64,000 bases of DNA from Pristiophorus japonicus (GCF_044704955.1 NC_091989.1:104780001-104844000); one strand, 5' to 3'; positions 906-61,564 are shown, counted from the first letter of the stretch. Notes: a model not told the origin generated them from the sequence alone. A program made the numbers and translations.

Positions 906-909
906 CAAT

Positions 910-5041: not shown

Positions 5042-5176
5042 GTTGCTGCTACCAATGGTTTAGGTCCACAGCTGTACACATTGCTGGCCATGGATAGGGA
5101 CCCTACTAATGGTTGCATTGGATTTGGAAAAGAAAGGTGAATTCCTGAGGAGAGGCAGGCATGCCGGCATGACAAG

Positions 5177-20800: not shown

Positions 20801-22857
20801 TTTGTTTACTCGGCCTTCCACTGTTGCTTTTTACCTTTCTATCATCTGTTTCTGACTCCATATTACTTCACCCTGTCTCACTGCATAGGTTCCCATCCGC
20901 CTGCCATATTAGTTTAAACACACCCGAACTGCATTCGCAAATGTTACCCCTAGGACATCAGTTCCAGTCCTGCCCAAGTGCAGACCATCCCTTTTGTACA
21001 GGTCCCACTTCCCCCAGAACTGGTTCCAATGTCCCAGGAATTTGAATCCTACCTCTTGCACCACTGCTCAAGCCACGTATTTATTCTAACTATCCTGCTC
21101 CCTCTACTCTGATTAGCACATGGCACTGGTAGCAACCCAGAGATTACTACCTTTGAGGTCCTACTTTTTAATTTAACTCCTAGCTCCCTAAATTCAGCTT
21201 GTAGGACCTCTTCCTGCTTCTTACGTATATCGTTGGTACCTACATGTACCACGACAGCTGGCTGTTCACCCTCCCTCTCCAGAATGCTCTGCAGCCGCTC
21301 CGAGACATCCTTGACCCTTGCACCAGGGAGGCAACATACCATCCTGGAGTCTCGGTTGTGGCCACAGAAACTCCTATCTATTCCCCTTACAATAGAGTCC
21401 CCTATCATTACAGCTCTCCCACTCTTTTTCCCGCCCTTCTGTGCAGCAGAGCCACCCATGGTGCCATGAACCTGGCTGCTGGTGCCTTCTCCTGGTAAGT
21501 CATCTCCCCCAACAGTATCCAAAACGGTATATCTGTTTTGGAGGGAGATGACCGCAGGGTCTCCTTCACTATCTTCCTGCTCTTGACTTGTCTCTTGGTC
21601 ACCCATTCACTATTTGTCCTAACCTTTACCTGCAGTGTGACAAACTCACTAAATGTGCTATCCACAATATTCTCAGCATCGCGCATGCTCTAGGGTGAGT
21701 CCATCCGCAGCTCCAGTGCCGTCATGCGGTCTGTCAGGAGCTGCAGCTGGACACACTTCCTGCACACATAGTAGTCAGGGACACTAGACGTGTCCCTGAT
21801 TTCCCACATAGCACAGGAGGAGCATGACATGGGTCCAAGCTCTCTTGCCATGACTTAACCCTTAAATTAATTTACTTACTAAAATTTACTTAAACACCAA
21901 ACAGCTACTTACTAGTTCACTGTCAATTAAACCAATCTAAAAGTCAGTCTAAAAGAGAGTTATACTTACCAGTTGAACAGCCAACCACTTACCAGCTTGG
22001 CTGTGATGTCACCTCTCGATTTCGCATCCCTCTAATCTTTGTCTGCAGCAGGTTGGGCTGGTCTCTGGGCCTCCATCTACAACTTTCGCACTCCTTATCA
22101 GCTGCTCTAGTGTCAGCACTGGTAGGAAAAACAAGACAAAACAGCACCTGCCACCCCCACTTGCCCTTAAATTTCACCCACTTACCAAACTCACGAATGC
22201 CACTCTATGCTACTGCATGAGCTGCCTCTTTTTAAACTGTATCTAGGTCAGATGACTCACTACTGGTCAGTCATTTACAGAACTGGTTTTAACTAGCTGC
22301 TAATTGCCTCCTACTGGAGAGTTACCTTGTTTTTCTCTGCCTAAACCTGAAAGATTCCCAACTATTTAACTTTTCCCTTTAAATTAAACTGCTACTTACT
22401 TAGAAGCTACTGACAATTGGCACTTACAATTTACTCCAGCCTCCAAATGGTTTAATGAGCATAACCCTGAAAACTCACCCACTTACCAAACTCACGAATG
22501 CCACTCCATGCTGCTGCACTCTGTGCTCTGCACGAGCTGCCTCTTTTTAAACTGTATCTAGGTCAGATGACTCAGTACTGGTCAGTCGTTTACAGAACTG
22601 GTTTTATCTAGCTGCTAATTGCCTCCTACTGGAGAGTTACCTTGTTTTTCTCTGCCTAAACCTGGAAGATTCCCAACTAGTTAACTTTTCCCCTTTAAAT
22701 TAAACTGCTACTTACTTAGAAGCTACTGGCAATTGCTACTAACAATTTACTCCAGCCTCCAAATGGTTTAAAGAGAATAACCCTTAAAACTCACCCACTT
22801 ACCAAATTCAGGAATGCCACTCTATGCTGCTGCACTCCGTGCTCTGAGCGAGCTGCC
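17826..22857 (-). mobile_element. Near full-length CR1 LINE: ORF1 (Zn finger plus SGNH esterase), ORF2 (EN-RT), tandemly repeated 5' region
   Basis: ORF1 ATG near 21851 with CSSC...CRKC, GDSIVR and HVGTND. ORF2 fragments span 20724 to 17927. 3' tail (ATAGAAAC)n at 17828-17850. Confidence 0.92.
22171..22857 (-). repeat. About 2.2 tandem copies of a ~300-316 bp unit at the CR1 5' end
   Basis: The unit start AAACTCACCCACTTACCAAA recurs at about 22171, 22471 and 22787. The first two units are highly similar throughout. Confidence 0.85.
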
Positions 22858-37019: not shown

Positions 37020-37074
37020 ATGTCGGTGAGAGCAACAGTGCAGTACATGGCTCTTCTGGGCATCCTTTGGCCAG
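37020..37074 (+). CDS. IgSF receptor exon 1 (leader)
   Basis: ACCATG start encoding MSVRATVQYMALLGILWP. Phase-1 donor CAG|GTACC, then a 211-bp intron to the V exon, as in the split leaders of Ig/TCR genes. Confidence 0.75.
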
Positions 37075-37285
37075 GTACCTCGAGTTGTTATATTTTTCCG
37101 TTTCTGAACAGCAAACCCTATTTTAGAATATTCTACAACTGTTGTGCATTGTAAAGTTAGATACCGTGCTTTTCCAATTTGATTGCTGGTGTTTCTTAAT
37201 TATTCTTGTATTTGACGTCTCTTAATTATTTTTCTTTATCTGATGTGTGCAACTGTTATCGCCATTCTAGTTTAATTTCCGATAG

Positions 37286-37591
37286 CCGTTGAAGTAAATT
37301 CGAACAAAGTGGACCAATTCCCTAAACACATGAAGGTTGCCAGGGGCATAAATGTTTCCATGTTCTGCATATTTCCCATATTTCAAGATGCCCCCGATGT
37401 TTATTGGAGCAGAAGCGGCGAGGAGACGTTTCTGGAGCCAGACAGCAGAAAGCAATTTAATGTAAAGAAGGGCAGAGGGTCATTTGATGTCCTGAATGCG
37501 AGTGTCGCAGACTCTGGAATGTATTACTGTACAGTAAAACATAATCAAACCACTGTTGGAGATGGAAGTGGCTCCCGGCTTACTGTGTTCG
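37286..37591 (+). CDS. IgSF receptor exon 2: germline-joined V-J type domain
   Basis: Phase 1-1 exon of 306 nt (GATAG|CC...TTCG|GTAAG). Encodes VDQFP...SMFC...VYW...DSGMYYC...GDGSGSRLTVF, with canonical V-set Cys/Trp/DxGxYYC and a J-like GxG strand. Confidence 0.9.
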
Positions 37592-38184
37592 GTAAGTGCC
37601 ATTGTGCCGGGGAGTGGGAGATTCTCAGCAGTGTGCGGTATATGTAAATCTCAATAGTGGGGGCCATTTGAACTTTTATCACTGGACGAAAACTGGTGAT
37701 AGCAAATTCGTTTTACACTTCTCCCGATTTTATTTTACATTTACTGCGGTGTACTCCGGCCCGCCGATTCGCTATCGCCCATTTTGCGCGATTGCCCAAG
37801 ATCAATTTCAACCCTTCATTGTCCGCATGCAATTCCAAAGGTTTTACATCTAATAAGTTATTTGGAAGTGCAGTTACAGTTGTTATGGAGGTAAGATACT
37901 GGAAGAGTATACTTGTTTAAATCTTGGCTTGAAATTAATAACTGGGATTAGGTGGCCAGATTTCTTATCAGCAAAATAGCGGTGCCGAGGAGCGACATTG
38001 GGAACAATGTTAACACCTTTTAGGTCAAGTCTCTTATATAACATGAAAGGCCATCTGCTCCATCCCAACAAGGTGCCTTCGTTGCAAACTCAGCAGAACA
38101 ATGTCTTTCTGCAACCCTGTTTATTTCACACACGGGGTAACCGTTTGAAATTGCCAATCTAATATTTTATATGCTGAATTGCCC

Positions 38185-38588
38185 AAAATGTGGAATTCCC
38201 TCTCTCAGAAGGCTGTGGATGGAGAGACAATTGGAACTTTCAAAATTGAGATGGATAGATTTCGTTAGGCAAGGGTATCAAGGGATATAATACGGGGGAG
38301 CCAATTTAAAACCGAGTTGAGAAGGAATTTCTTCTCCCAGAGGGTTGTGAATCTGTGGACTTCTCTGTCCAAGGAAGGAGTTGAGGCTAGCTCATTGAAT
38401 ATATTCAAATCACAGATAGATTTTTAACCAATATGGGAATTAAGGGTTATAGGGAGCGGGCGGGTAAGTGGAGCTGAATCCACGGCCAGATCAGCCATGA
38501 TCTTGTTGAATGGCAGAGCAGGCTCGAGGGGCTAGATGGCCTACTCCTGTTCCTAATTCTTATGTTCTTATGTTCTTATGTTCTTATT
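38185..38588 (+). mobile_element. Two CR1 3'-end fragments in intron 2
   Basis: The second fragment matches 15337-15630 and ends in (TTCTTATG)n. Confidence 0.85.
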
Positions 38589-38589
38589 A

Positions 38590-38910
38590 ATGTTGGGGAA
38601 GTCCAGAACCAGGGGTCGCAGTCTGGGGATGGGGGGTAGGCCATTTGGGACCGAGATGGGGAGAGACTTCTTCGCCTGGAGAGTGGTGGGACTGTGGCGT
38701 TCTCTGCCACAGAAGGTTGTTGGGGCCAGTTCACTGGGTATATTCGGGAAGGAGTTAGATGTGGTCCTTGCTACTGGGGGGATTGAGGGGTGTGGTGGGA
38801 GGGCAGGGTACTGAAGTTGCATGTTCAGCCATGAACTCATTGAATGGCGGTGCAGGCTCGAAGGGCCAAATGACCTACTCCTGCACCTATTTTCTATGTT
38901 TCTATTTTTC
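38590..38910 (+). mobile_element. CR1 3'-end fragment with dense A-to-G hypermutation
   Basis: Aligns to the reverse complement of 17830-18157 with about 30 A>G changes between 38608 and 38802. Confidence 0.9.
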
Positions 38911-38911
38911 T

Positions 38912-40513
38912 ATATAGAGTTAAGTCGGACAAATGAATTTGAGATACAGATCAGCCATTATCTAATTGAACGGCCTCCTCCTCTTCCTATGCCCGCATTT
39001 TAGGCTGTGCACTTGCTTACATCGAGAACTTATTTGAGACTGCCAAACTAATTTCACAAAGGAATCTTACAACACATTGAGAGGGACTGTGTTGTTCTTA
39101 CTCAATACTGGATTGGACCCCAAGTCCTAGAGCTGATGGGGCAATGTAGGAACCGAATGCCTCCTTGAAACTCGGTCTTATGCCAATTTAATTTTTTTAT
39201 ACACTCACAACCGGGCAGGATATCACCGAACATTTCTCTAAACGCCTGGGCTCCCGTATTTGTACTTGATGGTTTCCATTTACACTCCCCCCAACCCGTG
39301 ACTGCAGTTACGGCAGGAGATCAGAGAACACCGAGCCCGCCACCTCCACGGAAATTCTGCCGCATTACATATTAGATATAAACAGATTCGTGGGGAAGGA
39401 ATGGAGGAATTCTGATCTTCGGTTGGGCAGTCAACACGGTGCTGCTGGGAATAAAGGCCAAGATATTTTTCCAAGTTAATAATGCCCTGATTTAATAAAT
39501 TACTATTGTGACAAAATCGGACAAGTACAAATGTAAGGAAAAGATGTTATGGACATTGTTTGTAATAAACTGACAAAACAATGCAAACCTAATGAGGGAC
39601 TCTATTTCCAGCTAAAGAGTATCTGTAGCTCCAGCGGACAGAGGGTCACCTTAGTAACAGACGGTTGTAGGACTGATATAAGCAGAATCTTCTTCAGGCA
39701 AAACATGTTCAAAGAGCGAATAGACTTCGGGCAGGACAAAAACTCTGGAATTATATAAGACATGCACTCTGAGTTAGGATTTCCAATTGGGTTTCCCCCA
39801 TCTGTATGGATGTTGTGATCTACACAGAGATACACAATTATCAATGTAACCCTTTCGTGACGTGATAACTATTCCAGCCCTCGGTTCGCGCTCTGGGGAA
39901 AGTACATTAGAGAAAGCTGCATGATCTGAAATCTCCCCCACACAAACTGAAATGCTGAGTTAGCAACTGGAATGCGCGGGTTCTAATCTATAGATTAGCA
40001 GCATCCAGTCTGCCGTCTGTGTAGACAACGGAGATATTTCAATATATTATGTACATTTCCTCAATATTCACCGATAATTTTAGATCATATATCGAAATAT
40101 CTCTGATGTCTACACGGAATGTTGTGCAATATATGAAATATCCGAAAAACGACCAATTTTGAAATAAACCCACAAAATGTTTTACACAGCAAAGATTATT
40201 AATGAATAAAAAGGGCCGATTCCACTGTTTGTGTAGACTGGGTTGCGCTCTCCCCGATATATTCGGACAGGAACCTCACTCGGAGTCACAATCGCACGCC
40301 AGGATCTGATACTTCCATTGAGAACAGTGATGCGAGCCTCGCTGCATGTTACCGATCCTGGGACATTGGCCCTGTTTGCGTACCGTTTCCAATACCCGTC
40401 ATTTCGCTCTGCTGTGCAATCTATAAAATAAATACAAACAAGTTTAAAAAATGACAGCGCGGATAACTATTGTTAACTATACGGTAGCCGCATAAGGAGG
40501 GTAGGTAAATGAG
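38912..40513. repeat. Intronic block, copy 1 (duplicated at 42760-43589 plus 45770-46417)
   Basis: Long colinear near-identity between the copies. Examples are GAGAACTTATTTGAGACTGCCAAACT near 39024 and 42812, and GACAGCGCGGATAACTATTGT near 40453 and 46354. Confidence 0.9.
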
Positions 40514-40572
40514 AATGTCTTCCTTTAAATTGAAAAACAATGATCAATGTAATTTTTTTTTCTCCGTCAAAG

Positions 40573-40869
40573 TTCCTCCAACCCCCCTAAAAATCGTTGC
40601 TGTCGAAAGGATTTCAGCGACTTCTCTGAAACTCGAGTGTAAAACGGTTGACTTTTACCCGGGGCATTTAGAAATCTCCTGGCGAAGAGATGGTGTCGCA
40701 AATCTGACCGGAATAACAACTGTGAAAAACAGGAGCGCGGAGGGACTGTTTGAGGTTTCCAGCTGGTTGGAAGAAGCACAACCTGCCCAGAGTGGAGTTG
40801 TTTATACATGTCTGGTATCCCATGTGTCTCTTCGGGTGCCCGCCAATGTCAGCTACACCGTACAGCAAG
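40573..40869 (+). CDS. IgSF receptor exon 3: C1-set domain (C1a)
   Basis: Phase 1-1 exon of 297 nt with a strong polypyrimidine acceptor and CAAG|GTAAG donor. LECKTVDFYP...ISW...YTCLVSH is the C1-set signature (FYP, W, YxCxVxH). Confidence 0.92.
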
Positions 40870-41059
40870 GTAAGATTGGAAACATTTACAGCGGGGAACT
40901 GCTCCAACCTGTATTTACTTATTAACAAGTAGCTGGGCAGTTGTTCAAACCCAATGATATTGGGTAAATGAGAACTGTATTTACTGTCAATGTCTCATCA
41001 ATGGGAATGAAATTAATAATATTCAAAACGTGGAGTTAAGGAGGGAGACTATCTCCCTG

Positions 41060-42590
41060 CAGGATATCTGATAGGGTGTTCAAAATCATGAGGAGTTAGA
41101 GAGTAAATAGAGAGAAACTGTTCCCACTGGCAGAAGGGTTGAGAACCAGAGGACACCGTTTTAAGGTGATTGGCAGAAGAACCAAAGGCGACATGAGCAA
41201 AAACAGTTTTACACAGTGAGTGGTTAGGATCTGGAATACACCGCCTGAAAGGGTGGTGGAGGCAGTCTCAATTGAGGCTTTCAAAAGGGATCTGGATAAG
41301 CACCTGAAGAAAAAAAAGGCAGGACCACGGGGAAAGGACGGGGGTGTGAGACTAGCTTGTTCTTCTTTCGCATGATAGTAGCAAGGCAAATCAGATGTCG
41401 AAGTCAGATATCCAGGCCAAAGCTCCCGGTGTAACTGCAAATTTCCTCTGAGTTCAGTGCTCAATGATGTACCCCAGGGTCTGATTAGGAACTCCACAGT
41501 CGCTGATGGCGATGCTTTAATCTTCCACCTATGGAGAAGGTGCCTTCATCTACATAACCAGTTCTGAGGCAGTTGATGTTTGTCCACTGTTTGCAAGGAA
41601 GGTTTGATCCTTCAGATTGTACTGTGAGGTCCTTATAAGGAATCCATTCCGTATGTCACAGTTCTTCCAAGCACTTTGCCATCGGTCAGCATGGCTAAGG
41701 GGAGATTGCTGAAGGGCTTCAGCTATGGTCCAAAATGGCCTTCTCGATTTGAGACAGGTTGGTGGTATTTCCTTCAAATCAGCTTGGATCAGCATATCTT
41801 TGCTGGTGTACTGGTTGCATTCTCTGGAGGCTGCATATTCACACTGTAGGTGTGGTGATGTGATGTTTGCCAGCACTGGCAGCCAAGGAGTTGGTGTTGA
41901 TAAAAGCATAGTGGGACTAGCTGAAGTGCTCTTGCAGAGAGCCGACATGGACTCAATGGGCTGAATGGCCTCCTTCTGTGCTGTAACCATTCTATATTTC
42001 TATGGCGAAATCCGCAACGGGAGATTGATGTGCGAACTGCTCAAAAGCTGAAAGATCATTCCTCCTCAAATGAAATGAAATAATACAACAAATGGATAAG
42101 TTCTACCAGATTCGCTTGTACATCCTGTGTATTTAAATAGAATATATGGAACTGTCATTGGATAAAAGGAAACTATACTCTCTGGAGTTTATAAGATGAG
42201 AGGTGATCTCATTGAAACATATAACATTCTTCGAGAACTTGTTGAAGTAGATGCTGAGAGGTTGTTTCCCCTGGCTGGAGAGCCTGGAACTAGGGGGCAC
42301 AGTTTCAGATAACAGGTCGGCCATTTAAGACCGAGATGAGGATGATTTTTTTCATTCAGAGGGCTATGAACATTTGGAACTCTCTGCCCTAAAGGGATGC
42401 GGATGCTGAGTCATTGATTATAATCAAAGCTGAGATTGATCCATTCATGAGCTCTAAGGTAATAAAGGGATCGGGGATTGGGTGGGAAAGTGGAGTTGAG
42501 ATGGAAGATTAGCCATGATCTTATTGAAGGCTCGAGGGTTCGTAGTACTGGCTTACTACTGTCCTAATTATTATATACTTATTCTGTTCA
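41060..42590. mobile_element. Cluster of CR1 3' fragments (+) with a nested non-LTR (RTE-X-like) 3' fragment on - at about 41375-41905
   Basis: CR1 ORF2 C-terminal homology. The minus-strand ORF contains TPTPWLPVLANI...LKSRRPFW. Confidence 0.65.
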
Positions 42591-43589
42591 TCTGTTCTAT
42601 GCGCACCGTGCCTTCAGCTGCCTAGACCCTAAACTTTGGAATTCCCGCCCTAATCCTCTACTCTTCTGCACATTTCTCTCCTTCTTTAAGACGTTCCTAG
42701 GATCCTACCTCAACCTGTCCTAATTGTGACTCGGTGTCAAATGTTTGATAAGGCAAGGGATATGGAGTTAAGTGGGACACATGAATTTAGGTTGTGCACT
42801 TGCGTGCATTGAGAACTTATTTGAGACTGCCAAACTCATTTCATAAATGAATCTTACAACCCATTGAGAGGGGCTATGTTGTTGTTAACCTCAATACTGG
42901 ATTGGAACCAAAGTCCTATGGCTGATGGGGCAATGTAGGAACCCAATGATTGCTTGAAACTCAGTCTTATGCCAATTGAACTTGTTTATACATTCACAAC
43001 CGGGCAGGATATCACCGAACATTTCTCTAAACGCCCCCGTATTTGTACTTGATGGTTTCCATTTACACTCCCCGCAACCCAAGACTGCAGTTATGGCAGG
43101 AGATCATGACAACACCGATCCCGCCACCTCCACGGAAATTCTGCCGCATTACATATTAGATATAAACAGATCCATGGGGAAGGAATGGAGGAATTGTGAT
43201 CTTAGGTTGGGCAGTCAACATGGTGCTGCTGGGAATAAAGGACAAAATAATTTTCCAAGTTAATAATGCCTTGATTTAGTACATTGCTATTGCTACAAAG
43301 TCAGACAAGTGCAAATGTAAGGAAAAGATGTTAAGGGGGTTGTTTGTAATAAACTGACAAACCAATGCAAACCTAATGAGAGACTCTATTTCCAGCTAAA
43401 CAGTGTCTGTAGCCCCAGCGAACAGAGGGTCACCTTAGCAACAGACGATTGTTGGACTGATATAAGCAGAATCTTCTTCAGGCAAAACGTGTTCAACAGA
43501 GCGAATAGACTTCAGGCAGGGCAAAAACCCTGGAATTATATAAGACATGCACTCTGAGTTAGGATTTCTTATTGGGTTTCCCTCATCTG

Positions 43590-43924
43590 ATCCCAGGAGA
43601 GGCAAGGACCATGGGCAGCACGCGCCAGCGCACACTGCTATATGTGTGCGCGCTCGGTCAGTGCAGCAGAGCAAGTCTCCAGTCGTCTTGGGTACTCCTT
43701 GCCACTGGACCAAGACCTAGCTTTGTCAAGCCCGTGTGGTGTCTGGTGTGCAATGGTCACCACACATTAAAAAAAATCCAAGCACAGGCATCTTCCACCC
43801 TCCAACATATAGTTCGGGATCTGCAATATTAGGTCCTTCATTGAAACAACTGTGAACTCATTCCTTTTTGGCATGGGAGCAAGTCATCCTCATTTCTAGG
43901 GACTGCCTATGATGATGATGATGA
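43590..43924 (+). mobile_element. SINE-like element with an RTE-type 3' tail
   Basis: Ends CAAGTCATCCTC...GGACTGCCTATGATGATGATG, matching the tail of the RTE at 30975-31015 (reverse complement). Confidence 0.65.
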
Positions 43925-43939
43925 TATAATTTTCTCTGT

Positions 43940-45760
43940 GAAGAGAAAAAGATTAGTGAAAACAAACGTAGGTCCCTTGCAGTCAGATTCACGTAAATTT
44001 ATAATGGGAACAAAGAAATGGCAGACCAGTTAAACAAATACTTTGGTTCTGTTTTCATGAAGGAAGTCAGAAATAACCTTCTAGAAATACTAGGGGACCG
44101 AGGGTCTAGTGAGAAGGAGGAACTGAAGGATATCCTTATTAGGCAGGAAATTGTGTTAGGGAAATTGATGGGATTAAAGGCTGATAAATCCCCGGGGTCT
44201 GATAGTCTGCATCCCAGAGTACTTAAAGAAGTGGCTATAGAAATAGTGGATGCATTGGTGATCATTTTCCAACAGTCTATCGACTCTGGATCAGTTCCTA
44301 TGGACTGGAGGGTAGCTGATGTAACACCATTTTTTAAAAAGGGAGGGAGAGAGAAAACAGGTAATTATAGATTGGTTAGCCTGACATCAGTAGTGGGGGA
44401 AATGTTCGAATCAATTATGAAAGATGAAATAACAGCGCATTTGGAAAGCAGTGACAGGATCGGTCCAAGTCGGCATGGATTTATGAATGGCAAATCATGC
44501 TTGACAAATCTTCTGGAATGTTTTGAGGGTGTAACTACTCGAGTGGATAATGGAGAACCAGTGGATGTGGTCTATTTGGACTTTCAAAAGGCTTTTGACA
44601 AGGTCCCACACAAAAGATTGGTGTGTAAAATCAAAGCACATGGTATTGGGGGTAATGTACTGATGTGGATAGAGAACTGGTTGGCAGACAGGAAGCAGAG
44701 TCGGGATAAACAGATCCTTTTCAGAATGGCAGGCAGTGACTAGTGGAGTGTCGCAGGGCTCAGTGCTGGGACTCCAGCTCTTTACAAGATACATTAAAGA
44801 TTTAGATGAAGGAATTGAGTATAATATCTCCAAGTTTGCAGATGACACTAAACTGGGTGGCGGTGTGAGCTGTGAGGAGGACACTAAAAGGCTGCAGGGT
44901 GATTTGGACAGTTTAGGTGAGTGGGCAAATGCATGGCAGATGCAGTATAATGTGGATAAATGTGAGGTTATCCACTTTGGTGGCAAAAGCACGAAGGCAG
45001 AATATTATCTGAATGGCGGCAGATTAGGAAAGGGGGAGGTGCAACGAGACTTGGGTGTCACGGTTCATCAGTCATTGAAAGTTGGCATGCAGGTACAGCA
45101 GGCGGTGAAGAAGGCAAATGGTATGTTGGCCTTCATAGCTTGGGGATTTGAGTATTGGAGCAGGGAGGTCTTACTGCAGTTGTACCGGCCTGGTGAGGCC
45201 TCACCTGGAATATTGTGTTCAGTTTTGGTCTCCTAATCTGAGGAAGGACATTCTTGCTATTGAGGGAGTGCAGCGAAGGTTCACCAGACTGGTTCCCGGG
45301 ATGGCGGGACTGACATATGAGGAGAGACTGGATCAACTGGGCCTTTATACACTGGAGTTTAGAAGGATGAGAGAGGATCTCATAGAAACTTACAAGATTC
45401 TGACGGGACTGGACAGGTTAGATACGGGAAGAATGTTCCTGATGATGGGGAAGTCCAGAAGCAGGGGACATAGCCTTAGGATAAGGGGTAGGCCATTTAG
45501 GACTGAGATGAGGAGAAACTTCTTCACTCAGAGAGTTGTTAACCTGTGGAATTCCCTACCGCAGAGAGTTATTGATGCCAGTTCATTGATTATATTCAAA
45601 AGGGAGTTAGATGTGGCCCTTACAGCTAAAGGGATCAAGGGGTATGGAAAGAAAGCAGGAAAGGGGTACTGAGGTGAATGATCAGCCATGATCTAATTGA
45701 ATGGTGGTGCAGGCTCGAAGGGCCGAATGGCCTACTCCTGCACCTATTTTCTATGGTTCT
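43940..45760 (+). mobile_element. 5'-truncated CR1 LINE
   Basis: ORFs 44018-44743, 44736-45236 and 45148-45672 form a frameshifted RT, followed by a CR1 3'UTR. Confidence 0.92.
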
Positions 45761-47783
45761 GTGTGTCTATAATTATCAATATAACCCTTTCATGATTTGA
45801 AAAATATTCCAGCCCTGGAGAAAGTACATTAGGGAAAGCTGCATAATCTGAAATCTCCCCCACACAAACTGAAATGCTGAGTTAGCAACTGGAATGCGCG
45901 GGTTCTAATCTTTCGATTCGCAGCATCCAGTCTGCCGTCTGTGCAGACATCAGAGATATTTCGATATATTAGCTACATCTCCTCAAATGCACCGATAATC
46001 TAAAATATGTTTCGCAATATACGAAATATCCGATAAACGATCAATTTTCAAATAATGTTTAACACAGCAAAGATTATTAATGAATAAAAAAAGACGGTTC
46101 CACTGTTCGTGCAGACAGGGTTGCGCTCTCTCCGATATATTCGGACAGGAACCTCAGTCGGGGTCACTGCTGTCAACCACAATCCGCGCCAGGCTCTGAT
46201 ACCTCCATTGGGAACAGTGACGCGGGGCTCCCTGCATGTTACCGACCTTGGGAGTCTCGCCCTCTTTGCCTATCGTTCCCAATACATCCCGTCATACTGC
46301 TGTGCGCCGTAAAACAATTTATAAAGTAGATGCAGCCACCAAGTTTAAAAAACGACAGCGCGGATAACTATTGTGACAGTCGAACTGTAACATCATATCC
46401 AGGGTAGATAAATGAGACTATAACCCGATTTACACTATTTCACCAAGTCAAAATCGACCCCAAAGTGAGCTAATTATGGGCTGATTCCTGAAGGGAAGAT
46501 TCCCTCTGGCTAACCTTTTAGAAAACTACAATTTCACTGGAAATTGCAAACACAGATGTGGAGCAATGTTGGGCTGGTCGCGGTGTGTCGCAACGTTGCT
46601 AACATTGGCATGAAATGTAAGTCTTCTTTTGGAACAGCGTTTTTCACTAGAAACAAACCCACAAGGGACCTCTGTGAACACATTTACTATGTCCCTGCAC
46701 ATAGCGGACGTAGGAAACCCTCCTTCACGTTCCTCTCCACGCTACACGGAGAGTTTACCGTTCACTCGCCGAAACTTCGGCTGAAGAGCCGCGGAACTTA
46801 CGTTTTTTTCATGGTTTGAGCGGCTTCTCCGCCGAAGTTACAGCGAACCAGCGGGAGAATCCCGGTGGAAATATTTAAGATGTCCTCATAAAATGAGGAA
46901 TCGTCCTTTGTTTTGAAGCTTTAAGATTCCTGGAATGTTAGCAGGTCGTTGATAATCATGTGTACAGGAGGTATATGGCATGAGCGAAAGTTTCAAGATG
47001 TTTGGAAACGAATGGAATATATTGGAGCAGAAATAAGCATCTCACCTGTTCTGACGCGAAGTCTTAAAGAGCTGAGGAGAACACAGGGTTTTCAGGGCGT
47101 GGAATATCCTTTCAGAAACAGTGGTAGAAGCAGAGTCTATCATTGTTTTTTAAGTTATGTGGATAAATACGTCAACGGGACTAACTGGCCTCGTGTCTCA
47201 GAGCCGACACACGCACACTGAGCCGAATGGACTCCAGCACTGTAACGTACTATGATTTTATAACCGGATAACTATGATTCGGTAAATAGAACACACAGAT
47301 TTAAGATCATTGCCAAAGAACCAGAGGGGAAATGAGAAAAAATGTTTTACAAGGCTAGTTGTTATGATCTATAATGCACTGCCCGGAAGAGTGCTGCCAG
47401 CAGATTCAATAATAACTTTCAAACGGGAATTGGATGTACATTTGAAAAGGAATGTTTAGCAGAGCTATGGGGAAAGAGCAGAGATGTGGGACTAATGGGA
47501 TAGCTCTTTCAGAGAGCCGGCACAGGCAAGCTGGGCCCAATGGTCTCCTTCTGTGCTCCATTATTCTATGATTCTACCAAATATGGCACTTTTCGCTCTC
47601 CGTTTCGGTGCCCGTGTAATTTCTAGCTTAATGCTTAGTAATATTGGAAAACACAGAAATTAACAACGTTCGGATGAAACACTTTGTGAAACGGACCCGT
47701 CCTAAACTCGTGTTCTAAATTATAGACTGCAGAAATAACATAATAATTAGTATTTCAAACACAAACTAATGTTCTTTCCCCAG

Positions 47784-48114
47784 CCCCCCCCCCCCCCCCA
47801 CCCCAACCCCCCCAAGCTCGGCCCACTCCTCTGAGCATCGACTTGATCGAGTCTGAGTTCCGCCCACCCATTTCTCCGACTCTCGTGTGTAAAACAGCGA
47901 AGTTTTACGCTGAAGATCTCAATGTGATTTGGTATAAAAACAACGAAAAGCTTGTAACTGGGGACAATACTGAACAGCGCAGCGCGGTGGGCCTGTATGA
48001 GGTTTGCAGCACTTTCAAAGATACGGCGCATGTCCGCAGTGGGGCTCTGTACAGCTGTACAAGTGTCTCATGTCTCTCTTCAGACTCCAGCCAGTGTTAA
48101 TTACAGCTCCGAAG
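47784..48114 (+). pseudogene. IgSF receptor exon 4: second C1-set domain (C1b) with a +1 frameshift at 48059
   Basis: Two in-frame acceptors at 47783 and 47816. Reads PTPLSI...LVCKTAKFYA...VIWY...GLYEVCS...YSC[+A]QVSHVSLQTPASVNYSSE, then G|GTACC. Paralogous to C1a. As written, it stops at TAA 48098-48100. Confidence 0.85.
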
Positions 48115-48240
48115 GTACCGTCAATACATTTTTCAGAAACGTTCTTCCTTTACACTTTTTCTTAATACAGGGACATGTTGTGAACACTTTTGTTACAATT
48201 TGATGTTACTGCAATCGTTTATTACATTGAGGGTCTGTTT

Positions 48241-48413
48241 AGAAACATAGAAACATAGAAAATAGGTGCAGGAGTGGGCCATTCGGCCCTTCTAGCCTGC
48301 ATCGCCATTCAATGAGTTCATAGCTGAACATGCAACTTCAGTACCCCATTCCTGCTTTCTCGCCATACCCCTTGATCCCCCTAGTAGTAAGGACTTCATC
48401 TAACTCCTTTTTG
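48241..48413 (-). mobile_element. CR1 3'-end fragment, same subfamily as the 17826 and 38590 copies
   Basis: (ATAGAAAC)n tail and a shared 3'UTR. Confidence 0.88.
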
Positions 48414-48798
48414 TCAGATTGTGAATTGTTTCATTTGCAGGCATTGTATTTGAATATTGTTTTAATCATATCGGCATGGCCTTTACATGATTCGTTCTGA
48501 TCCTAAAGTCATAGAATCATAGATATTTACAGCTCATCGTGTCGGCGCCGGCCGACAAAGAACTATCCAGCCGAATCCCACTTCCCAGCTCTTGGTCTGT
48601 AGCCCTGTAGGTTAAAGCACTACAAAACAAAGTGCGCCCATCATGAAAAGAAAAGACATTTAAAGAAATACCTTCAGGACGACGGGTAAACATTTTCAAA
48701 TACGTTTAGTGATCCCGTGTACCTCTGGGTTTTCTTGCTGGTTTAATTGACATTATTGCCCGTCAGCTTTATATCTCCGTAACTCTGTGTGTTTGCAG

Positions 48799-48898
48799 GT
48801 GCTGTGTGTTTGTTGCAACGACATTTCGGGAGTGTATTGGTCATAATGGTGCTGGTGGCCATCGTTGGGAATTATTGTAAGTTGAAGTACTGTCAAAG
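48799..48898 (+). CDS. IgSF receptor transmembrane exon
   Basis: TTTGCAG|GT acceptor. Phase-1 reading gives GAVCLLQRHFGSVLVIMVLVAIVGNYCKLKYCQ. Donor AAG|GTGAG, with an alternative GTAAGT at 48877. Confidence 0.7.
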
Positions 48899-49484
48899 GT
48901 GAGACACAGGTTTATTACCAGAGCGCATCGTCGCTTTACAGATCAATTTTTTGTTGTAAATCAACAGATAACGTCGCGTTAAATGATCGGAGACATTTGG
49001 ACCATAATTTCTTCATTGGAAGTAAGAGGATGTCTATCCCGGGGCAGTGGTTGGTGCAGAGTTGTGTCAACACTATCTCCAGACCAACAGTATCTCACAA
49101 GAGACAACGATCTTCGCTGGTCCCTGTGGCTCAGCAACGTTACGAAGATATTTGGAGGATTCCCATGTTCTGGGGAAATAGCAGAAGTGTTTTAAGAGAC
49201 GCCGCTTAGGATTTCACTAGAAATAGCAACCAGAGGACCCACCACCCCGGGTATTAAAGGGGAATACAAATACAACCGCATCGTTATCGGACCAATATTT
49301 TGATTCACAACAATTATTTTAAAGGATGATGAATTGCTCTGGTGATTGTGTGGGGAAATGTTAAATGCATTTCAGAGTGTTTGTGAATTGGCTGCACCTA
49401 GCCAGAGCGGGTTCCTCCCACCGCATTCACTTACCCGGACTGTTCAGCTGTGAAGCTGGTTTTCTTGGTTCAGTACACATTGTG

Positions 49485-56099: not shown

Positions 56100-59000
56100 G
56101 GGGCTAGAATCGGCACTTTTTTTGCATGCTTAATGCCCACTTAACGTCCATTTTACTGCTGAAATGACGTATAACGCCCAGATATTGCCCATTTTGGCAC
56201 AAAATGGAACAGACGGGCATTTTTCGGAAACTTATCACCGAGCGTTACTTTCCCCACGTGCTTAATGCGGGGGGAAAATATTACATAAGAATATAAGAAC
56301 ATAAGAAATAGGAACAGGAGTAGGCCATACGGCCCCTTGAGCCTGCTCCGCCATTCAATAACATCACGGCTGATCTGATCATGGATTCTGCTCCACTTTC
56401 CCCCATGGATTCTGTACCCCATTATTACCGCCCGCCCAACTTTTTGGGGCATAATCAGCAGAATGGGTGAAATCAACGGCCATAATATCACCCGGCGTTC
56501 CTTTCTGCACCGAATTAACACCGAGATTCAATACTAAAGCCAGCCCACTGTTTTTTGTTATAAAGAGCATATTTACCCAAATTAGCAGCAATGGAGATCG
56601 CCCATTGTCAATTTCACCACCTCACACACATATCGCCCACAATATCGCTCGACAAAAAAACGCCCACAAAAAGTGGAAGTAAGCGGAACGAACGCCAGCG
56701 GTGTGGCTGAGGCATTTGTTAAATCCCACTCTTTCTTGTGGAGCTGGTAGATGAAAGATTTGCCTGATGGTGCACTCATGTGAGTGACAACGCTGACACA
56801 CTGCTGTGTGTGTGCAGCTCAGACATCAATGGTGCCCATCACCTTGGTGCCAGTTAAAGATTACGTTGATTGATGTTAAGTTGTATTTAACTCTTTCATG
56901 TAATGGTCCAGCTATCTGAGAAAATGCACAACAAGGTTATGTTCAATAACAAAAATGTAATACCAACATTGGTCTGAAATCATAAGTATCACAGCCAATA
57001 ACACCCAACCATGCCCACACCCCACTTTTTCCACATTTGAGGCCGGCTTGAACGGTACTGTTCTAACATGGTTAATTCCATTGCCTGCCATGAAGTCCTG
57101 GAATTCAGTGCTTGTGAAGCACGGGCCATTGTTGCTGACCAAGATGTCCGGTAGACCGTGGGTGGCGAACATTGACCGTAGACTTTCTACCGTGGCAGAG
57201 GATGTGCTTGAATTTAAAATGTCACACTCGATCCATTTGGAGTAGGCGTCTACTACAACCAAAAACATTTTCCCCATGAAAGGACCTGCGTAGTCCACAT
57301 GGATGCGTAACCAAGGCTTGGCGGACCATGGCCAGGGGCTAAGGGGGGCTTCCCTGGGCGCATGGCCCAGCTGGGCACACGTGTTGCACCTGCGAACACA
57401 AAGTTCCAGATCTGCGTCTATCCCTGGCCACCAAACGTGTGACCTGACAATTGCCTTCATCGTGACAATGCCCGGGTGCCCATTGTGGAGTTCTCTGATG
57501 AACACTTCTCTGCCCATCTGGGGCATGACTACGTGGTTTCCCCACAGTAGGCAATCGGCCTGAATCAAGAGTTCATCCTTGCGCCTGTGAAATGGTTTAA
57601 ATTTCTCAGGGCATGCCCTGTACGTGGCTGCCCAGTCCCCATTCAGGACACATTTCTTGACTAGAGACAATAGCGGGTCTCTATTTGTCCAGACTTTAAT
57701 CTGACGGGCTGTCACGGGTGAGCCTTCGCTTCCGAAAGCTTCAACAGCCATGACCATCTCAGCACCATGCTCGGTAGCCCCCTCAGTGGTGGCTAGTGGG
57801 AGCCTGCTGAGTGCATCGGCGCAGTTTTCGGTGCCCGGTCTGTGCCGAATTGTGTAGTCATAGGCAGCTAACGTGAGTGCCCACCTCTGTATGCGGGCCG
57901 ATGTGTTTGCATTTATGGCCTTGTTGTCGGCCAAAAGGGACGTTAGGGGTTTGTGATCTGTCTCCAGCTCAAATTTCCTGCCAAACAGGTACTGGTGCAT
58001 TTTCTTTACCGCATATACACATGCAAGCGCCTCCTTTTCTACCATCCCATAGCCCCTTTCTGCCTGGGACAGACTCCTGGAGGCATAAGCTACCAGCTGT
58101 AACTGACCCTTGGCATTGACATGCTGCAACATACACCCGACACTATAGGAAGACGCATCGCACGTTAACACAAGTCTCTTACATGAGTCATATAGCGTTA
58201 ACAGGTTGTTGGAACATAACAAATTGCGTGCTCTATTAAAAGCCCTTTCCTGGCTGTCCCCCCAGACCCATTCGCGACCTTTGCATAGGAGCACGTGTAG
58301 CGGCTCTAGCAGCGTGTTCAATTTTGGAAGAAAGTTACCAAAATAGTTCAGGAGCCCCAGGAACGAATGCAGCTCCGTCGTGTTACGGGGTCTGGGTGCT
58401 CTCTGGATCGCTTTCGTCTTGGATGCAGTAGGGCTGATCCCGTCTGCTGCTACCCTCATCCCCAGGAATTCTACCTCTGGAGCTAGGAAGATGCACTTCG
58501 CCTTTTTCAGTCGCAGACCTACCCGGTCCAGTCTGTGTAGCACCTCCTCCAGGTTGTGGAGGTGTTCTTCAGTATCGTAACCCGTAATGAGGATGTCGTC
58601 CTGAAAAATCACCGTCCCTGGAATCGACTTGAGGAGGCTTTCCATATTTCGTTGGAAGATCGCGGCAGCCGAGCGAATCCCGAATGGACATCTGTTGTAC
58701 TCAAACAACCCCTTGTGTGTTGTGATGGTGGTCAGCTTCTTCGATTCACTCGCCAGCTCCTGGGTCATGTAAGCTGAGGTCATGTCCAATTTTGAAAAAA
58801 GTTTGCCACCGGATAGCGTCGCAAAGAGGTCCTCCACTCTCGGTAGCGGGTACTGGTCTTGGAGTGACACCCGATTGATGGTGGCCTTGTAATCGCCACA
58901 TATCCTGACCGACCCATCCGCCTTGAGCACCGGCACAATCGGGCTCGCCCAGTCACTGAATTCGACTGGCGAGATGATGCCTTCCCTCAGCAGGTGGTTC

Positions 59001-61564
59001 AATTCGCCTTCTATCTTTTCCCGCATCATGTACGGCATCGCTCTGGCCTTGTGGTGTACTGGTCTGGCGTCCAGGTTTTTGTGAATCACTACCTTGGCCC
59101 CCATGAAAGTGCCAATGCTGGGTTGAAATAATGAGTCAAATTTGTCCAGGATCTGTGAGCATGATACTCGCTCCACAGAGGAAATTGCATTGACATCGCC
59201 CCATTTCCAGTTCATGACAGCAAGCCAACTCCTCCCCAGTAGTGCGGGACCGTCCCCCGGGACAATCCAGAGTGGCAACCTCTTCTCCGAATCTTTGCCA
59301 ATCGATCGTCCCTGACTGCCCCTGTTATTGTCCTTCAGTGCACCATTAACAGGTGTTGATGGCCCCATTACTGGCCGCAATAGCGTGAATCGCTGTTCAG
59401 CTTGCCATTGTCTCTGTCGAACTCCTCCTCTGGGTTAGACTACATGTTGGGGCATGCCTGACTGCCCTTGTCTGCCTGGAGAACTGTGTGCTGCTTTAAC
59501 AATGTTGAATCTCTGTCCCAACCATTCCTTAACACAGTACCTCTCGTCTGTTCTGCTAGTGGCCATGCTCGCGTGGTTTAAATCCCAGTTTCTTGTCGCC
59601 ATTGATACGTCCTTACTACACAGTATAAATGCACACAAGGCCCATGCTTGAGAGAAGGTCAGTCTGTGACCTGTCCTTTATTCCTTAGCACTCAAGTGAT
59701 GAAGGTGGGTGGAGCTTCCCCTTTTATGCCTGAAGGTCCAGGTTAGGAGTGTCTCCCACCTAGTGGTCAGTGTTCTCATGGTGTACAACTTAGGTCAGTT
59801 TATACATGGGTTACAATGCTGGTTGAATACATGACAGGCGCCATCCTGGGGTCAAAAGGGGAGCCTTGTGGCGAGGTGCTTGGGGCCGGTACCTCCAGAG
59901 TGGAGGCGGGAATGACCAGAGGATGACTAGATGGCCTTGGGGTGAAAGGGCTTCTGGAGCGTGGCGATGCAGGTTCTTCGAAGTCCGTGCTCTCATCTGT
60001 ACAGAACAGATCCAGCGGATTAATGGGCGAGAATCGGAGCTCCTCAGCACCAGATGTCATAGGATCGTCTGCCGACTCCTGCCCCACACCCCCACCTTCT
60101 GGTCTCTATGGTCTTGCCTGGGGCCGTGCTACTGGCTGAACTGCAAAACACAAATGAGGTTATTAGAGAAGAAGTGGGTGCTCGGGTCACAAGGTGAGTC
60201 CAGCGCTACACACAGCATATGCACGACAGAAGCACCACCCATATCAAAATCATCACAGACATCACATTTCATGACCAACAACACATGTACATTGCAATGA
60301 TTTTCATTAGGCCAGCATTATTTCTAGGACAATTTTAGAAATCATCTATCATATATGATTGTTCGGGTCTAGCATCTATTGACTTTACATAACGTAATGG
60401 TGTAAGCTTTACTCATGTGGCATCACTTCAGGATCTGCAGATGCATCCGTGACCATCTGAGGGTGCTTCCCCATGAATGCGAGCACACGCTCCTCCATGT
60501 CAATGATGTCGCTGGGAACTGACCCCCACCTGTTCACCTCTGCATGAATCTCATCGCTGATAGCTTTTTCTGTAAAAGGTGACAGGGCGACATGGCATGA
60601 GATCATTGCATGATATCATTGCTAGGTAATGGCACAGACACTGATACAACACATAACCGACAGATGTAATCATCATTATTATGCTAATTATCATTCTTTA
60701 CCATGACCGCAGGCTTTGAGTAAAACATTCCCGGTAAAAGTGCAAGACCACACATCTGCTGATAGTCACTCATGACGGTTACAAATCAAATGATATAAAT
60801 ACTTAAGTACATGTAAATGAATGTAATACTCTTGCAGATCCCACAAGGTCCTTCCATCGTTTGCGGCATTGGTTGCCCTCACTCACCTCGTTGGTTACCA
60901 ACGAGACCACCTCTGCTATCTCGGTTCATATCCTCTGGTATGCCTTTGGGGTGGGCTTCCCACGCCCTCCCTGTATCAAATCACCCCAGCGTAACTCGAC
61001 CTCCTGCAAGAGGGAGGCATTTGCCTCATCCGACAAGCTCCTCGCTCTATTGCGGCCTCCAATGTGCTCCTCTCCCAGCTCACTGATCTCTCCAGTGTCA
61101 GTCTCCACAGCGTGCTGTGATGTCTCCTCCTCTCTCTCGATTATCGACCAAATTCCATCAAATATGTGGCTGGAAACACCTACTTTTTGTTTGGCTACTT
61201 GCTGTGAAGCTCTAAAGTCTCGCTCCTTCCTCCCAAAGCAGCCACACCACACCCAGCCACGCCTTCAGTCCCTCTGACCTCCCTCTCTCTTTGTCGCCTA
61301 TTCTGCTAATGTCATGGTGACCCTTGGCCTTCGGAATCACGGCAATGGAGCATTGCCATGCCGTTGCTAAGGATGGCCACACTTTATGGCAGAAGGTCAA
61401 AAAAATTTTACGATACCGCCCATTTTATATCGCTTGCAGTAACGCCCATTTTCAAAAATGTAAACTAGGTGTTTTGAGAATGGGCCAGAAGCCGGCGATC
61501 TCAAAACCCTTTTCATCGCCCACGCCAGAAAAATCACCAACACAAAAGTGGAGGTTCTAGCCCC
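56100..61564 (-). mobile_element. Harbinger-like DNA transposon remnant hosting Gypsy D
   Basis: Imperfect inverted ends GGGGCTAGAA...CACTTTT at 56100 and 61564. Myb/SANT-like exon at about 60840-61250 (RARSLSDEANASLLQEVELRW...CRKRWKDL). Weak transposase-like PKVMGTID near 56830. The TSD is not clean. Confidence 0.5.
57036..59836 (-). mobile_element. Gypsy LTR retrotransposon D: 5' LTR, deleted gag/protease, open RT-RNase H-partial integrase
   Basis: LTR 59603-59836 and PBS TGGCGACAAG at 59592-59601. The 822-aa ORF 56912-59380 contains FQDD, TCDAS, ETDHKPL, HPG...WWPG...C..C and HVDYAGP. Homology ends at PASN near 57036. Confidence 0.9.

What the first reader, a model, noticed from the sequence alone, without database searches (positions are those of the whole stretch)
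37020..48898. Non-rearranging antigen-receptor-like gene: leader / joined V-J / C1 / C1 / TM
Seen: five exons with canonical splice sites, all joined in phase 1. The V exon runs through YYC into a J-like GDGSGSRLTV strand and a donor, with no RSS or separate J. Both constant exons have C1-set signatures. Established: C1-set domains are largely confined to Ig, TCR, MHC/beta2m, tapasin, SIRP and some B7-family proteins. VJ-C1-C1-TM is the SIRP layout, and germline VJ plus C1 genes are candidate relatives of the pre-RAG antigen-receptor ancestor. Inference: this is a member of a poorly described chondrichthyan innate receptor family. I cannot assign it to SIRP, NKp30, IgNAR, UrIg or TCR by eye.
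Basis: partly seen in the sequence, partly recalled or inferred. Interest (0 to 1): 0.85.

Follow-up and report, generated by a model that had tools for sequence, protein, structure and literature searches.

The report
Shark SIRP-like VJ-C1 receptor gene
This is a real, non-rearranging immune-receptor gene (leader, joined V-J domain, one C1 domain, membrane anchor) from a large, unnamed receptor family found only in sharks, rays and chimaeras; its supposed second C1 domain is a broken exon left over from a neighbouring gene.

Summary
All five exons are present with AG/GT sites. The claim that all join in phase 1 fails. The second C1 exon (47817-48114) is 298 nt, carries one extra base after its second cysteine codon, and hits TAA at 48098.

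Leader, V and first C1 are 83%, 74% and 77% identical to Heterodontus francisci XP_067906043. NCBI's pipeline names that protein [quoted passage not shown] (SIRP-alpha-like). It belongs to a family of at least 100 sequence clusters. All 30 clusters I named are chondrichthyan, and each species' members lie on contigs of one size.

The usual layout is VJ, one C1, then a membrane anchor. That anchor comes with either a long ITIM tail or an arginine-bearing helix and a short tail, which suggests paired inhibitory and activating receptors.

The second C1 is the counterpart of the C1 of a different Heterodontus gene that has its own leader and V (70% identity; clade support 100/99; AU test p = 0.0003). 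I read it as a captured or relic exon, not a SIRP-type third domain. The membrane exon is of the arginine type, and no ITIM exons are in the window.

Sequence does not show the family to be closer to SIRP than to Ig light chains or UrIg2. No RNA evidence was obtainable.

The scan's first-stage notes flag clusters that look like the same family elsewhere in this genome (for example s1-877182, s1-874477).

The parts
37020..37074 (+). Leader exon (MSVRATVQYMALLGILWP plus 1 base), ends in phase 1
   Evidence: It matches the N-terminus of Heterodontus P0152 at 15 of 18 residues. The spliced junction residues WP-A-VEV match WP-A-AEV in P0152.
37286..37591 (+). Single-exon V domain with a J-like G strand (GSGSRLTV), compact, without a C'' strand
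   Evidence: Pfam V-set 1.5e-9. It is 74% identical to P0152/P0166 and 69% to Heptranchias P0173. AlphaFold model pLDDT 92.9 with strands A, A', B, C, D, E, F, G and only a vestigial C'. No RSS motifs.
40573..40869 (+). C1a: intact C1-set exon, phase 1 to 1
   Evidence: Pfam C1-set 4.8e-9. It is 77% identical to P0152. It sits in a shark-plus-ray clade with 100/99 support. The family's invariant residues P, C, W, C, H are all present.
47817..48114 (+). C1b: C1-set exon with one extra base (48059-48062 region), in-frame TAA at 48098-48100; relic or captured exon of a different paralogue lineage
   Evidence: It is 298 nt. It is 69-70% identical to the C1 of Heterodontus XP_067906047/48 (P0188/P0047), which has its own leader and V. 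Clade with P0047 has 100/99 support, and the AU test rejects C1a+C1b as a clade at p = 0.00027.
48799..48898 (+). Membrane-anchor exon (G)AVCLLQRHFGSVLVIMVLVAIVGNYCKLKYCQR, followed at once by TGA (48900-48902) or by a GTGAGA donor
   Evidence: It is the best match in the whole window to both family transmembrane profiles (E 0.008 and 0.011 over 2,678 six-frame pieces). Its Arg lines up with the Arg of the short-tailed members' helices.
38999..40514 (+). Intron block upstream of C1a that is repeated upstream of C1b
   Evidence: 38999-39804 matches 42786-43589 at 90.5%, and 39836-40514 matches 45771-46417 at 76.6%. The alignable parts of the two C1 exons are only about 67-76% identical at the nucleotide level. 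It is not a high-copy repeat in run X1.
42786..46417 (+). Second copy of the intron block, split by a CR1-type LINE (reverse-transcriptase ORFs 44018-45672)

Best explanation
The locus encodes a short-tailed, probably activating, member of a multigene family that, as far as sampled, is confined to cartilaginous fish. The family consists of non-rearranging VJ-C1 membrane receptors, and public annotation pipelines call them 'SIRP-alpha-like'.

The likely product is leader, compact V(J) domain, one C1-set domain (C1a), then a membrane helix carrying an arginine and an eight-residue tail. That is about 253 residues by adding the exons; the spliced protein was not built. It would form if the C1a donor (40869) joins the membrane exon (48799). 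Both are phase 1.

By analogy with SIRP-beta, activating KIRs and NKp receptors (my own knowledge), the arginine would pair with an acidic residue of an ITAM adaptor. Sibling genes carry conserved LTYAAL-type ITIM tails and would signal through SHP phosphatases. The family would therefore work as paired inhibitory and activating receptors.

The 'second C1' (C1b) is not part of the ancestral gene. It is the counterpart of the C1 exon of another paralogue, which in Heterodontus has its own leader and V. Here it has lost that leader and V, carries a one-base insertion, and is most likely skipped or dead.

Shown: the exons, family membership, the separate origin of C1b, and the frameshift.
Inferred: the splicing pattern, the adaptor pairing, and any expression.
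For: - Exons and phases.
- Orthologue-level identity to Heterodontus XP_067906043 (leader 83%, V 74%, C1a 77%), with the same residues at the L-V and V-C1 junctions.
- Family size and layout: 144 cluster representatives at E <= 1e-10. Nearly all single-hit proteins are V-C1-TM with either a 70-130-residue tail with ITIM motifs or a 3-35-residue tail.
- Same-species pairs with long and short tails are 78-83% identical over about 250 aligned residues, mainly V and C1 (P0171/P0172, P0175/P0179, P0018/P0178).
- All 30 named clusters are chondrichthyan, and within a species the listed contig size is the same for all its members.
- C1b groups with the C1 of Heterodontus P0047/P0188 (100/99 support; AU p = 0.00027 against C1a+C1b).
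- No second V is present in the window.
- The membrane exon is the top family-profile hit in the window, with the arginine aligned.
- No ITIM exons lie downstream.
Against: - No transcript evidence. The only public run that holds the V exon is a low-coverage, DNA-like data set of a relative.
- C1b has good splice sites and no damage other than one base and one Pro-to-Ala change. It could therefore still be included, and the extra base could be an assembly error.
- The membrane-exon match is weak (about 13 bits). It does not discriminate the inhibitory-type from the arginine-type profile.
- The DH motif that ends most arginine-type helices is GN(Y) here.
- A nearly invariant Trp (WW) in the V domain is Ser here.
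- Gene adjacency in Heterodontus is inferred only from consecutive accession numbers and an identical contig size.
Confidence: 0.6

Rival explanations
1. This is a genuine chimeric VJ-C1-C1-TM gene (the SIRP-like three-domain layout). A deletion between two tandem VJ-C1 genes removed the first gene's anchor and tail exons and the second gene's leader and V. The one-base insertion in C1b is an assembly error, an allele or a very recent lesion.
For: - C1b keeps a strong acceptor, a usable donor, both cysteines, the Trp and no stop other than the one caused by the shift.
- The first gene's expected ITIM-tail exons and the second gene's V are both missing, as a single deletion would predict.
- Two-C1 members exist in the family, for example Amblyraja P0006.
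- The extra base is not in a long homopolymer, so it need not be a typical read error. It could still be allelic.
Against: - As assembled, the frame is broken and the G strand would be lost.
- The FYP proline is replaced.
- The two C1s of P0006 are near-identical recent duplicates, not a capture from another lineage.
- No reads were available to check the base.
Confidence: 0.15
2. The whole locus is a dead remnant. It is a truncated gene left by rearrangement in a transposon-rich stretch and is not expressed as protein.
For: - The rest of the 64-kb window is almost entirely LTR and CR1 retroelements.
- The locus lacks the tail exons of its closest relatives.
- One exon is frameshifted.
- A nearly invariant Trp is lost in the V domain.
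- No protein from this gene is in the searched protein collections.
Against: - The leader, V, C1a and membrane exons are all open, with conserved core residues and good splice sites.
- Short-tailed members of about the same length (253-259 residues) are annotated in other species.
Confidence: 0.2
3. The family, and so this gene, is the true cartilaginous-fish orthologue of mammalian SIRP, and the automatic name is right.
For: - Human SIRP-alpha (2wng) is the best non-titin solved match of the orthologue P0152 (44 bits).
- With the family profile it scores 112 bits and SIRP-gamma scores 100.
- The family shares a VJ-type V, C1-set domains, LTYAAL / TEYA.L-type tail motifs, and paired long-tail and charged-helix forms.
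Against: - Ig lambda chains score almost the same per domain (41.8 bits, and about 90 bits for two domains), and UrIg2 scores 132.8.
- For C1a alone, no SIRP chain is among the 60 best. These are MHC class II beta, Ig and UrIg2.
- For the V exon, V-NAR and TCR-beta lead.
- The family has one C1 where SIRP has two.
- Pipelines give the same family at least seven other names besides the two SIRP ones.
- No tree with SIRPs and no synteny could be made here.
Confidence: 0.1

Closest known systems
SIRP-alpha / SIRP-beta (signal-regulatory proteins)
   Same: - Non-rearranging V domain with a J-like strand, followed by C1-set domains (SIRP structure: PMC2785349).
- Inhibitory forms with ITIM tails and partner forms with a charged membrane helix and a short tail.
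- SIRP-alpha is among the top solved matches of the orthologue.
   Different: - The family has one C1 instead of two.
- The V is compact and lacks C''.
- SIRP is not clearly closer than Ig light chains or UrIg2.
- The CD47-type ligand is unknown.
- This particular gene has no ITIM tail.
PRARP genes (Fu et al. 2019, J Immunol; cited in PMC10751288)
   Same: As I recall the abstract, these are non-rearranging VJ-C1 membrane proteins with an ITIM, found from bony fish to birds. That is the same domain order as this family's inhibitory members.
   Different: PRARP was not reported as a large paired-receptor cluster. This resemblance is a lead from memory, not a test.
UrIg and UrIg2 (PMC12227049; PDB 9dmx)
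   Same: Elasmobranch, non-rearranging, single-exon VJ with a split leader followed by C1-type domains. UrIg2 is the second-best solved match of C1a and of the family profile.
   Different: - UrIg has three C domains and is secreted.
- UrIg2 has nine to eleven C domains.
- Per-domain scores are low (11-27 bits).
- Proteins with four to ten C1-type matches, one of them auto-named 'titin-like' (P0002), stand apart from the one-C1 family, and P0002's domains fall outside it on the tree. I did not check them against UrIg2.
V-NAR and other antigen-receptor V domains
   Same: The V model's best structural matches are V-NAR, CD79b, TCR V and lambda V (TM 0.72-0.81). V-NAR is the best single-domain sequence match (25.7 bits). 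Like V-NAR it lacks the C'' strand.
   Different: No RSS and no separate J; one exon. Identity is only 20-30%. The margin over TCR and IgL V domains is too small to claim a special relationship.

Membership tests
Chondrichthyan VJ-C1-TM family (automatic names: SIRP-alpha-like, tapasin-related-like, NCR3LG1-like and others) | Leader plus single-exon V ending in a G.G(S/T).L.V strand | tested here: met
   V exon 37286-37591. It is 74% identical to P0152, and the family's invariant G, C, W, Y, C are present.
Chondrichthyan VJ-C1-TM family (automatic names: SIRP-alpha-like, tapasin-related-like, NCR3LG1-like and others) | One C1-set domain beginning VPPTPL and carrying YTCLVSH | tested here: met
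   C1a is 77% identical to P0152 and sits inside a 100/99-supported clade of shark and ray members.
Chondrichthyan VJ-C1-TM family (automatic names: SIRP-alpha-like, tapasin-related-like, NCR3LG1-like and others) | Membrane anchor of the family type (with an ITIM tail, or with an arginine in the helix and a short tail) | tested here: met
   Exon 48799-48898 is the top hit in the window to both family transmembrane profiles (E about 0.01), and its Arg is aligned with the family Arg. The match is weak, so this rests partly on position and splice phase.
SIRP | V-set domain followed by two C1-set domains | tested here: not met
   C1b is frameshifted and belongs to another paralogue lineage. Relatives have one C1.
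SIRP | Closer in sequence to SIRP than to other VJ-C1 proteins | tested here: inconclusive
   SIRP-alpha scores 44 bits against Ig lambda 41.8 and UrIg2 36.4. With the profile the scores are 112, about 90 and 132.8. No SIRP is among the 60 best matches of C1a or of the V exon.
SIRP | ITIM tail recruiting SHP-1/2 (alpha), or a lysine helix pairing with DAP12 (beta) | not testable with these tools
   No ITIM exons are in the window. An Arg is present in the helix. Binding needs experiments.
SIRP | Conserved synteny with the SIRP locus; CD47 binding | not testable with these tools
UrIg / UrIg2 | VJ followed by three (UrIg) or nine to eleven (UrIg2) C1-type domains | tested here: not met
   There is one intact C1. 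Definition taken from PMC12227049.
Rearranging antigen receptors (Ig, TCR, IgNAR) | V and J separated by recombination signal sequences | tested here: not met
   V runs into the J-like strand in one open exon, and no heptamer or nonamer lies in 37286-37700.
PRARP | Sequence relationship to chicken or fish PRARP | not tested
   Neither the paper nor the sequences were held.

The most novel reading that the evidence does not exclude
The family is the cartilaginous-fish survivor of the pre-RAG VJ-C1 receptor stock. Its compact, C''-less V would be the nearest non-rearranging relative of the V-NAR / TCR-type V. This locus would catch the step by which a one-C1 receptor acquires a second C1 by capturing a neighbour's exon, which is the route to SIRP-, UrIg- and heavy-chain-like multi-C layouts.
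Probability: 0.1. Interest if true: 0.8.

Novelty: new member of a known kind. Interest (0 to 1): 0.42.

Why it matters
Non-rearranging VJ-C1 genes are the candidates for relatives of the gene that the RAG transposon split. So far UrIg, UrIg2, NKp30, SIRP and PRARP carry that discussion.

This gene shows that sharks, rays and chimaeras also hold a large clustered family of VJ-C1 membrane receptors. The family has conserved ITIM tails and arginine-helix partners. It sits in the databases only under contradictory automatic names, and I found no paper on it in the library searched.

The gene itself is an ordinary, possibly damaged, member. The value lies in the family: its trees, linkage and ligands could be worked out with existing chromosome-level assemblies.

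Tried and rejected
- RNA support: the look-up of sequencing runs found a single run (X1, share 0.13). Read laying showed it to be low-coverage, DNA-like contigs of a relative: one 210-nt contig on the V exon at 92% identity, and the rest repeats. It gave no junctions and no check of the extra base.
- Search for ITIM-tail exons, the 'GK.RL.IS' tail exon and a second V: tblastn with ten family proteins and motif scans of 40.9-64 kb found none.
- The stretch just after C1b (48115-48205) looks by eye like the start of family anchors (GT.NTF, FRNV) but did not reach E <= 50 in the profile search. I treat it as chance or decayed.
- UrIg/UrIg2 membership was rejected on domain number and low per-domain scores.
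- SIRP orthology was neither shown nor excluded. A tree with true SIRP, PRARP and NKp30 sequences could not be built because no referenced sequences of these were available.
- Literature: searches for SIRP with cartilaginous fish, shark or elephant shark, and for PRARP, found no description of this family. PMC10530332 (UrIg) is not held.
- Synteny through the scan's own notes gave only other family clusters on the same chromosome piece.
Exons were searched one by one by reference, and natural full-length orthologues (P0152 and others) stood in for the joined model.
Full report
**1. The exons**

On the + strand there is a leader exon at 37020-37074. It starts with ATG, encodes 18 codons plus one base, and has the donor GTACCT.

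The V exon is 37286-37591 (306 nt, AG acceptor, donor GTAAGT). A first C1 exon lies at 40573-40869 (297 nt, donor GTAAGA). A second C1 exon lies at 47817-48114 (298 nt, donor GTACCG). A short hydrophobic exon lies at 48799-48898 (donor GTGAGA, or an in-frame TGA at 48900-48902).

Pfam gives V-set (1.5e-9) for the V exon and C1-set for both C exons (4.8e-9 and 1.5e-6). The V exon runs from the first cysteine through YYC into GDGSGSRLTV. It has no recombination-signal heptamer or nonamer nearby.

C1b is 298 nt long, so it cannot enter and leave in phase 1. Read in the entering frame it stops at TAA 48098-48100. The conserved end of the domain (VSHVSLQTPASVNYSSE) is in the next frame. The break is one extra base right after the second cysteine codon.

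**2. What the gene belongs to**

A search of 1.84 billion cluster representatives with C1a gave 485 hits, 144 of them at E <= 1e-10.

Hits with a single matched stretch are almost all proteins of 230-420 residues. They carry a V domain at about residues 20-120, one C1 at about 122-220 and a membrane helix. After the helix comes either a 70-130-residue tail with ITIM-type motifs or a tail of 3-35 residues.

I looked up names for 30 such clusters. All come from sharks, rays or the elephant shark (Heterodontus, Scyliorhinus, Heptranchias, Mustelus, Cetorhinus, Carcharodon, Hemiscyllium, Chiloscyllium, Amblyraja, Mobula, Narcine, Pristis, Hypanus, Hemitrygon, Callorhinchus). Within a species, the contig size listed for its members is always the same, which points to a single cluster per genome.

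The automatic names disagree with each other. They include 'tyrosine-protein phosphatase non-receptor type substrate 1-like', 'signal-regulatory protein beta-1-like', 'tapasin-related protein-like', 'NCR3 ligand 1-like', 'immunoglobulin lambda-1 light chain-like', 'T cell receptor beta chain-like' and 'HLA class II ... beta chain-like'.

The closest protein is Heterodontus francisci XP_067906043 (P0152, 380 residues). Identity is 15 of 18 in the leader, 74% in V and 77% in C1a. The residues at the two splice junctions are the same (WP-A-VEV against WP-A-AEV; LTVF-VPPTPL against LTVY-VPPTPL). This supports the first two junctions across species.

A genomic ORF from another species (P0001) keeps the V exon at 69% identity.

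**3. The second C1 is not a second domain of the ancestral gene**

C1a and C1b are about 38% identical as protein.

C1b is 69-70% identical to the C1 of a different Heterodontus protein, XP_067906047/48 (P0188/P0047). That protein has its own leader and its own V, which is only 38% identical to the window's V. Its accession numbers follow directly on those of P0152's gene, and both list a longest contig of 99,651,266 bases.

In a careful tree of 49 C1 domains, C1b joins P0047 with 100/99 support. C1a sits inside a 17-member shark-plus-ray clade, also with 100/99 support. Forcing C1a and C1b together costs 59.6 log-likelihood units (AU p = 0.00027). I named that grouping after seeing a first tree, which weakens the test somewhat.

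The window holds no V of the P0047 type and no anchor or ITIM exons of the P0152 type. The simplest history is a tandem pair like the one I infer in Heterodontus, from which the stretch between the first gene's C1 and the second gene's C1 was lost or replaced.

About 1.5 kb of the intron ahead of C1a is repeated ahead of C1b. Identity is 90.5% for 38999-39804 against 42786-43589, and 76.6% for 39836-40514 against 45771-46417. A CR1 element is inserted between the two parts of the second copy.

This block is more similar than the exons, whose alignable parts are about 67-76% identical at the nucleotide level. That points to recent non-allelic exchange in this region. Besides the extra base, C1b has lost the proline of the family's FYP motif.

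**4. The membrane exon and the likely signalling type**

I built profiles from the family's anchor regions and searched all 2,678 six-frame pieces of the window. Both the inhibitory-type and the arginine-type profile put the piece holding 48799-48898 first (E 0.008 and 0.011). Nothing else came close.

The short-tailed relatives carry an arginine a few residues into the helix, for example Scyliorhinus P0172, Heptranchias P0173 and Carcharodon P0132. The window's exon has its arginine (LLQRHFGSVLVIMVLVAIVG) at the aligned place and ends eight residues after the helix.

Long-tailed relatives share a conserved LTYAAL motif from the elephant shark to rays, plus T.YA.L-type motifs. Same-species long-tail and short-tail forms are 78-83% identical over about 250 aligned residues, mainly V and C1.

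This is the pattern of paired inhibitory and activating receptors. The step from 'arginine in the helix' to 'pairs with an ITAM adaptor' is inference from SIRP-beta, KIR and NKp receptors (my own knowledge).

C1a's donor and the membrane exon's acceptor are both phase 1. Skipping C1b would therefore give an in-frame protein of about 253 residues, the size of annotated short-tailed members (253-259 residues).

**5. The V domain**

With a 60-sequence family alignment, the V exon folds with mean pLDDT 92.9. The model has strands A, A', B, C, D, E, F and a G strand with a bulge at the G.G motif. C' is only a vestige and there is no C''.

The best structural matches are V-NAR domains, CD79b, TCR V-alpha and V-beta, and lambda V (TM 0.72-0.81). 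No SIRP V domain is among the roughly 40 matches listed.

By sequence, the best single-domain solved match is a V-NAR (25.7 bits), just ahead of TCR-beta. The margins are small, so I draw no special kinship from them.

**6. Relation to known families**

With the full-length orthologue, human SIRP-alpha (2wng) scores 44 bits, Ig lambda chains up to 41.8 and UrIg2 36.4.

With the family profile, UrIg2 scores 132.8 (three stretches), SIRP-alpha 112 (two stretches) and lambda chains about 90 (one stretch). Per domain there is no winner.

For C1a alone, the best single-domain matches are MHC class II beta-2 domains (46 bits). No SIRP is among the first 60.

SIRP is defined by V-C1-C1 (PMC2785349), which this gene does not meet. 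UrIg has three C domains and UrIg2 has nine to eleven (PMC12227049), which it also does not meet.

The layout VJ-C1-TM-ITIM is, as I recall it, that of the PRARP genes of bony vertebrates (Fu et al. 2019, cited in PMC10751288). I could not obtain that paper or its sequences, so this is a lead only.

I found no paper on the chondrichthyan family in the library.

**7. What could not be done**

No RNA run holding the gene was found. The window has no other cellular gene, only LTR and CR1 elements, so linkage to the MHC or its paralogons is untested.

The scan's own first-stage notes report clusters that look like the same family 513 kb upstream on the same piece and on other pieces of this genome. 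I did not check these.

**8. Verdict**

This is a real, non-rearranging VJ-C1 receptor gene. It is a new member of a family that is annotated but uncharacterised, and that has so far been found only in cartilaginous fish. It works most like SIRP-type paired receptors.

The three-domain SIRP layout is an artefact of reading a broken, foreign C1 exon into the gene. Alternatively, and less likely, it is a recent exon capture.

Noticed in passing
window 48115-48205: Read-through after the C1b donor gives EGTVNTFFRNVLPLHFFLIQG. By eye this recalls the start of the inhibitory-type anchors (GTDNTF in P0152) and the FRN(I/V)V start of the Scyliorhinus arginine-type anchors. It did not reach E <= 50 in the family anchor profile search.
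   Followed up: partly
window 38999-40514 versus 42786-43589 and 45771-46417: The intron block ahead of each C1 exon is 90.5% and 76.6% identical, more than the exons themselves. It is not a high-copy repeat in run X1. This suggests recent non-allelic exchange or conversion between paralogues.
   Followed up: partly
window 56912-59380 (- strand): An uninterrupted 822-residue ORF that looks like a Ty3/Gypsy-type pol, possibly from a young LTR element. I judged this by eye from the ORF list only. Related, more broken copies lie at 1-12,600.
   Followed up: no
window 13287-15527 (+), 17927-21606 (-), 44018-45672 (+): Several CR1-type LINE copies. The one at 13.3-15.5 kb has two long adjoining ORFs of 313 and 312 residues. 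Its 3' end (15335-15636) is 93% identical to the fragment at 38289-38587 in the V-C1a intron.
   Followed up: no
window 37406-37408 (V residue 41): The second Trp of the family's nearly invariant WW after strand C is Ser in this gene (YWSRSG). This is the only departure from the conserved V core.
   Followed up: no
proteins P0170, P0172, P0173 (Heterodontus, Scyliorhinus, Heptranchias): Short-tailed relatives end in a shared GK.RL.ISA..(H/Q)N peptide. In P0170 it follows C1 directly, with no membrane helix, which may mark a soluble isoform. No such exon was found in the window.
   Followed up: partly
window 37305-37512, run X1: A 210-nt contig of a related species covers the V exon with 17 differences (92% identity), so the exon is conserved in at least one more species.
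   Followed up: no
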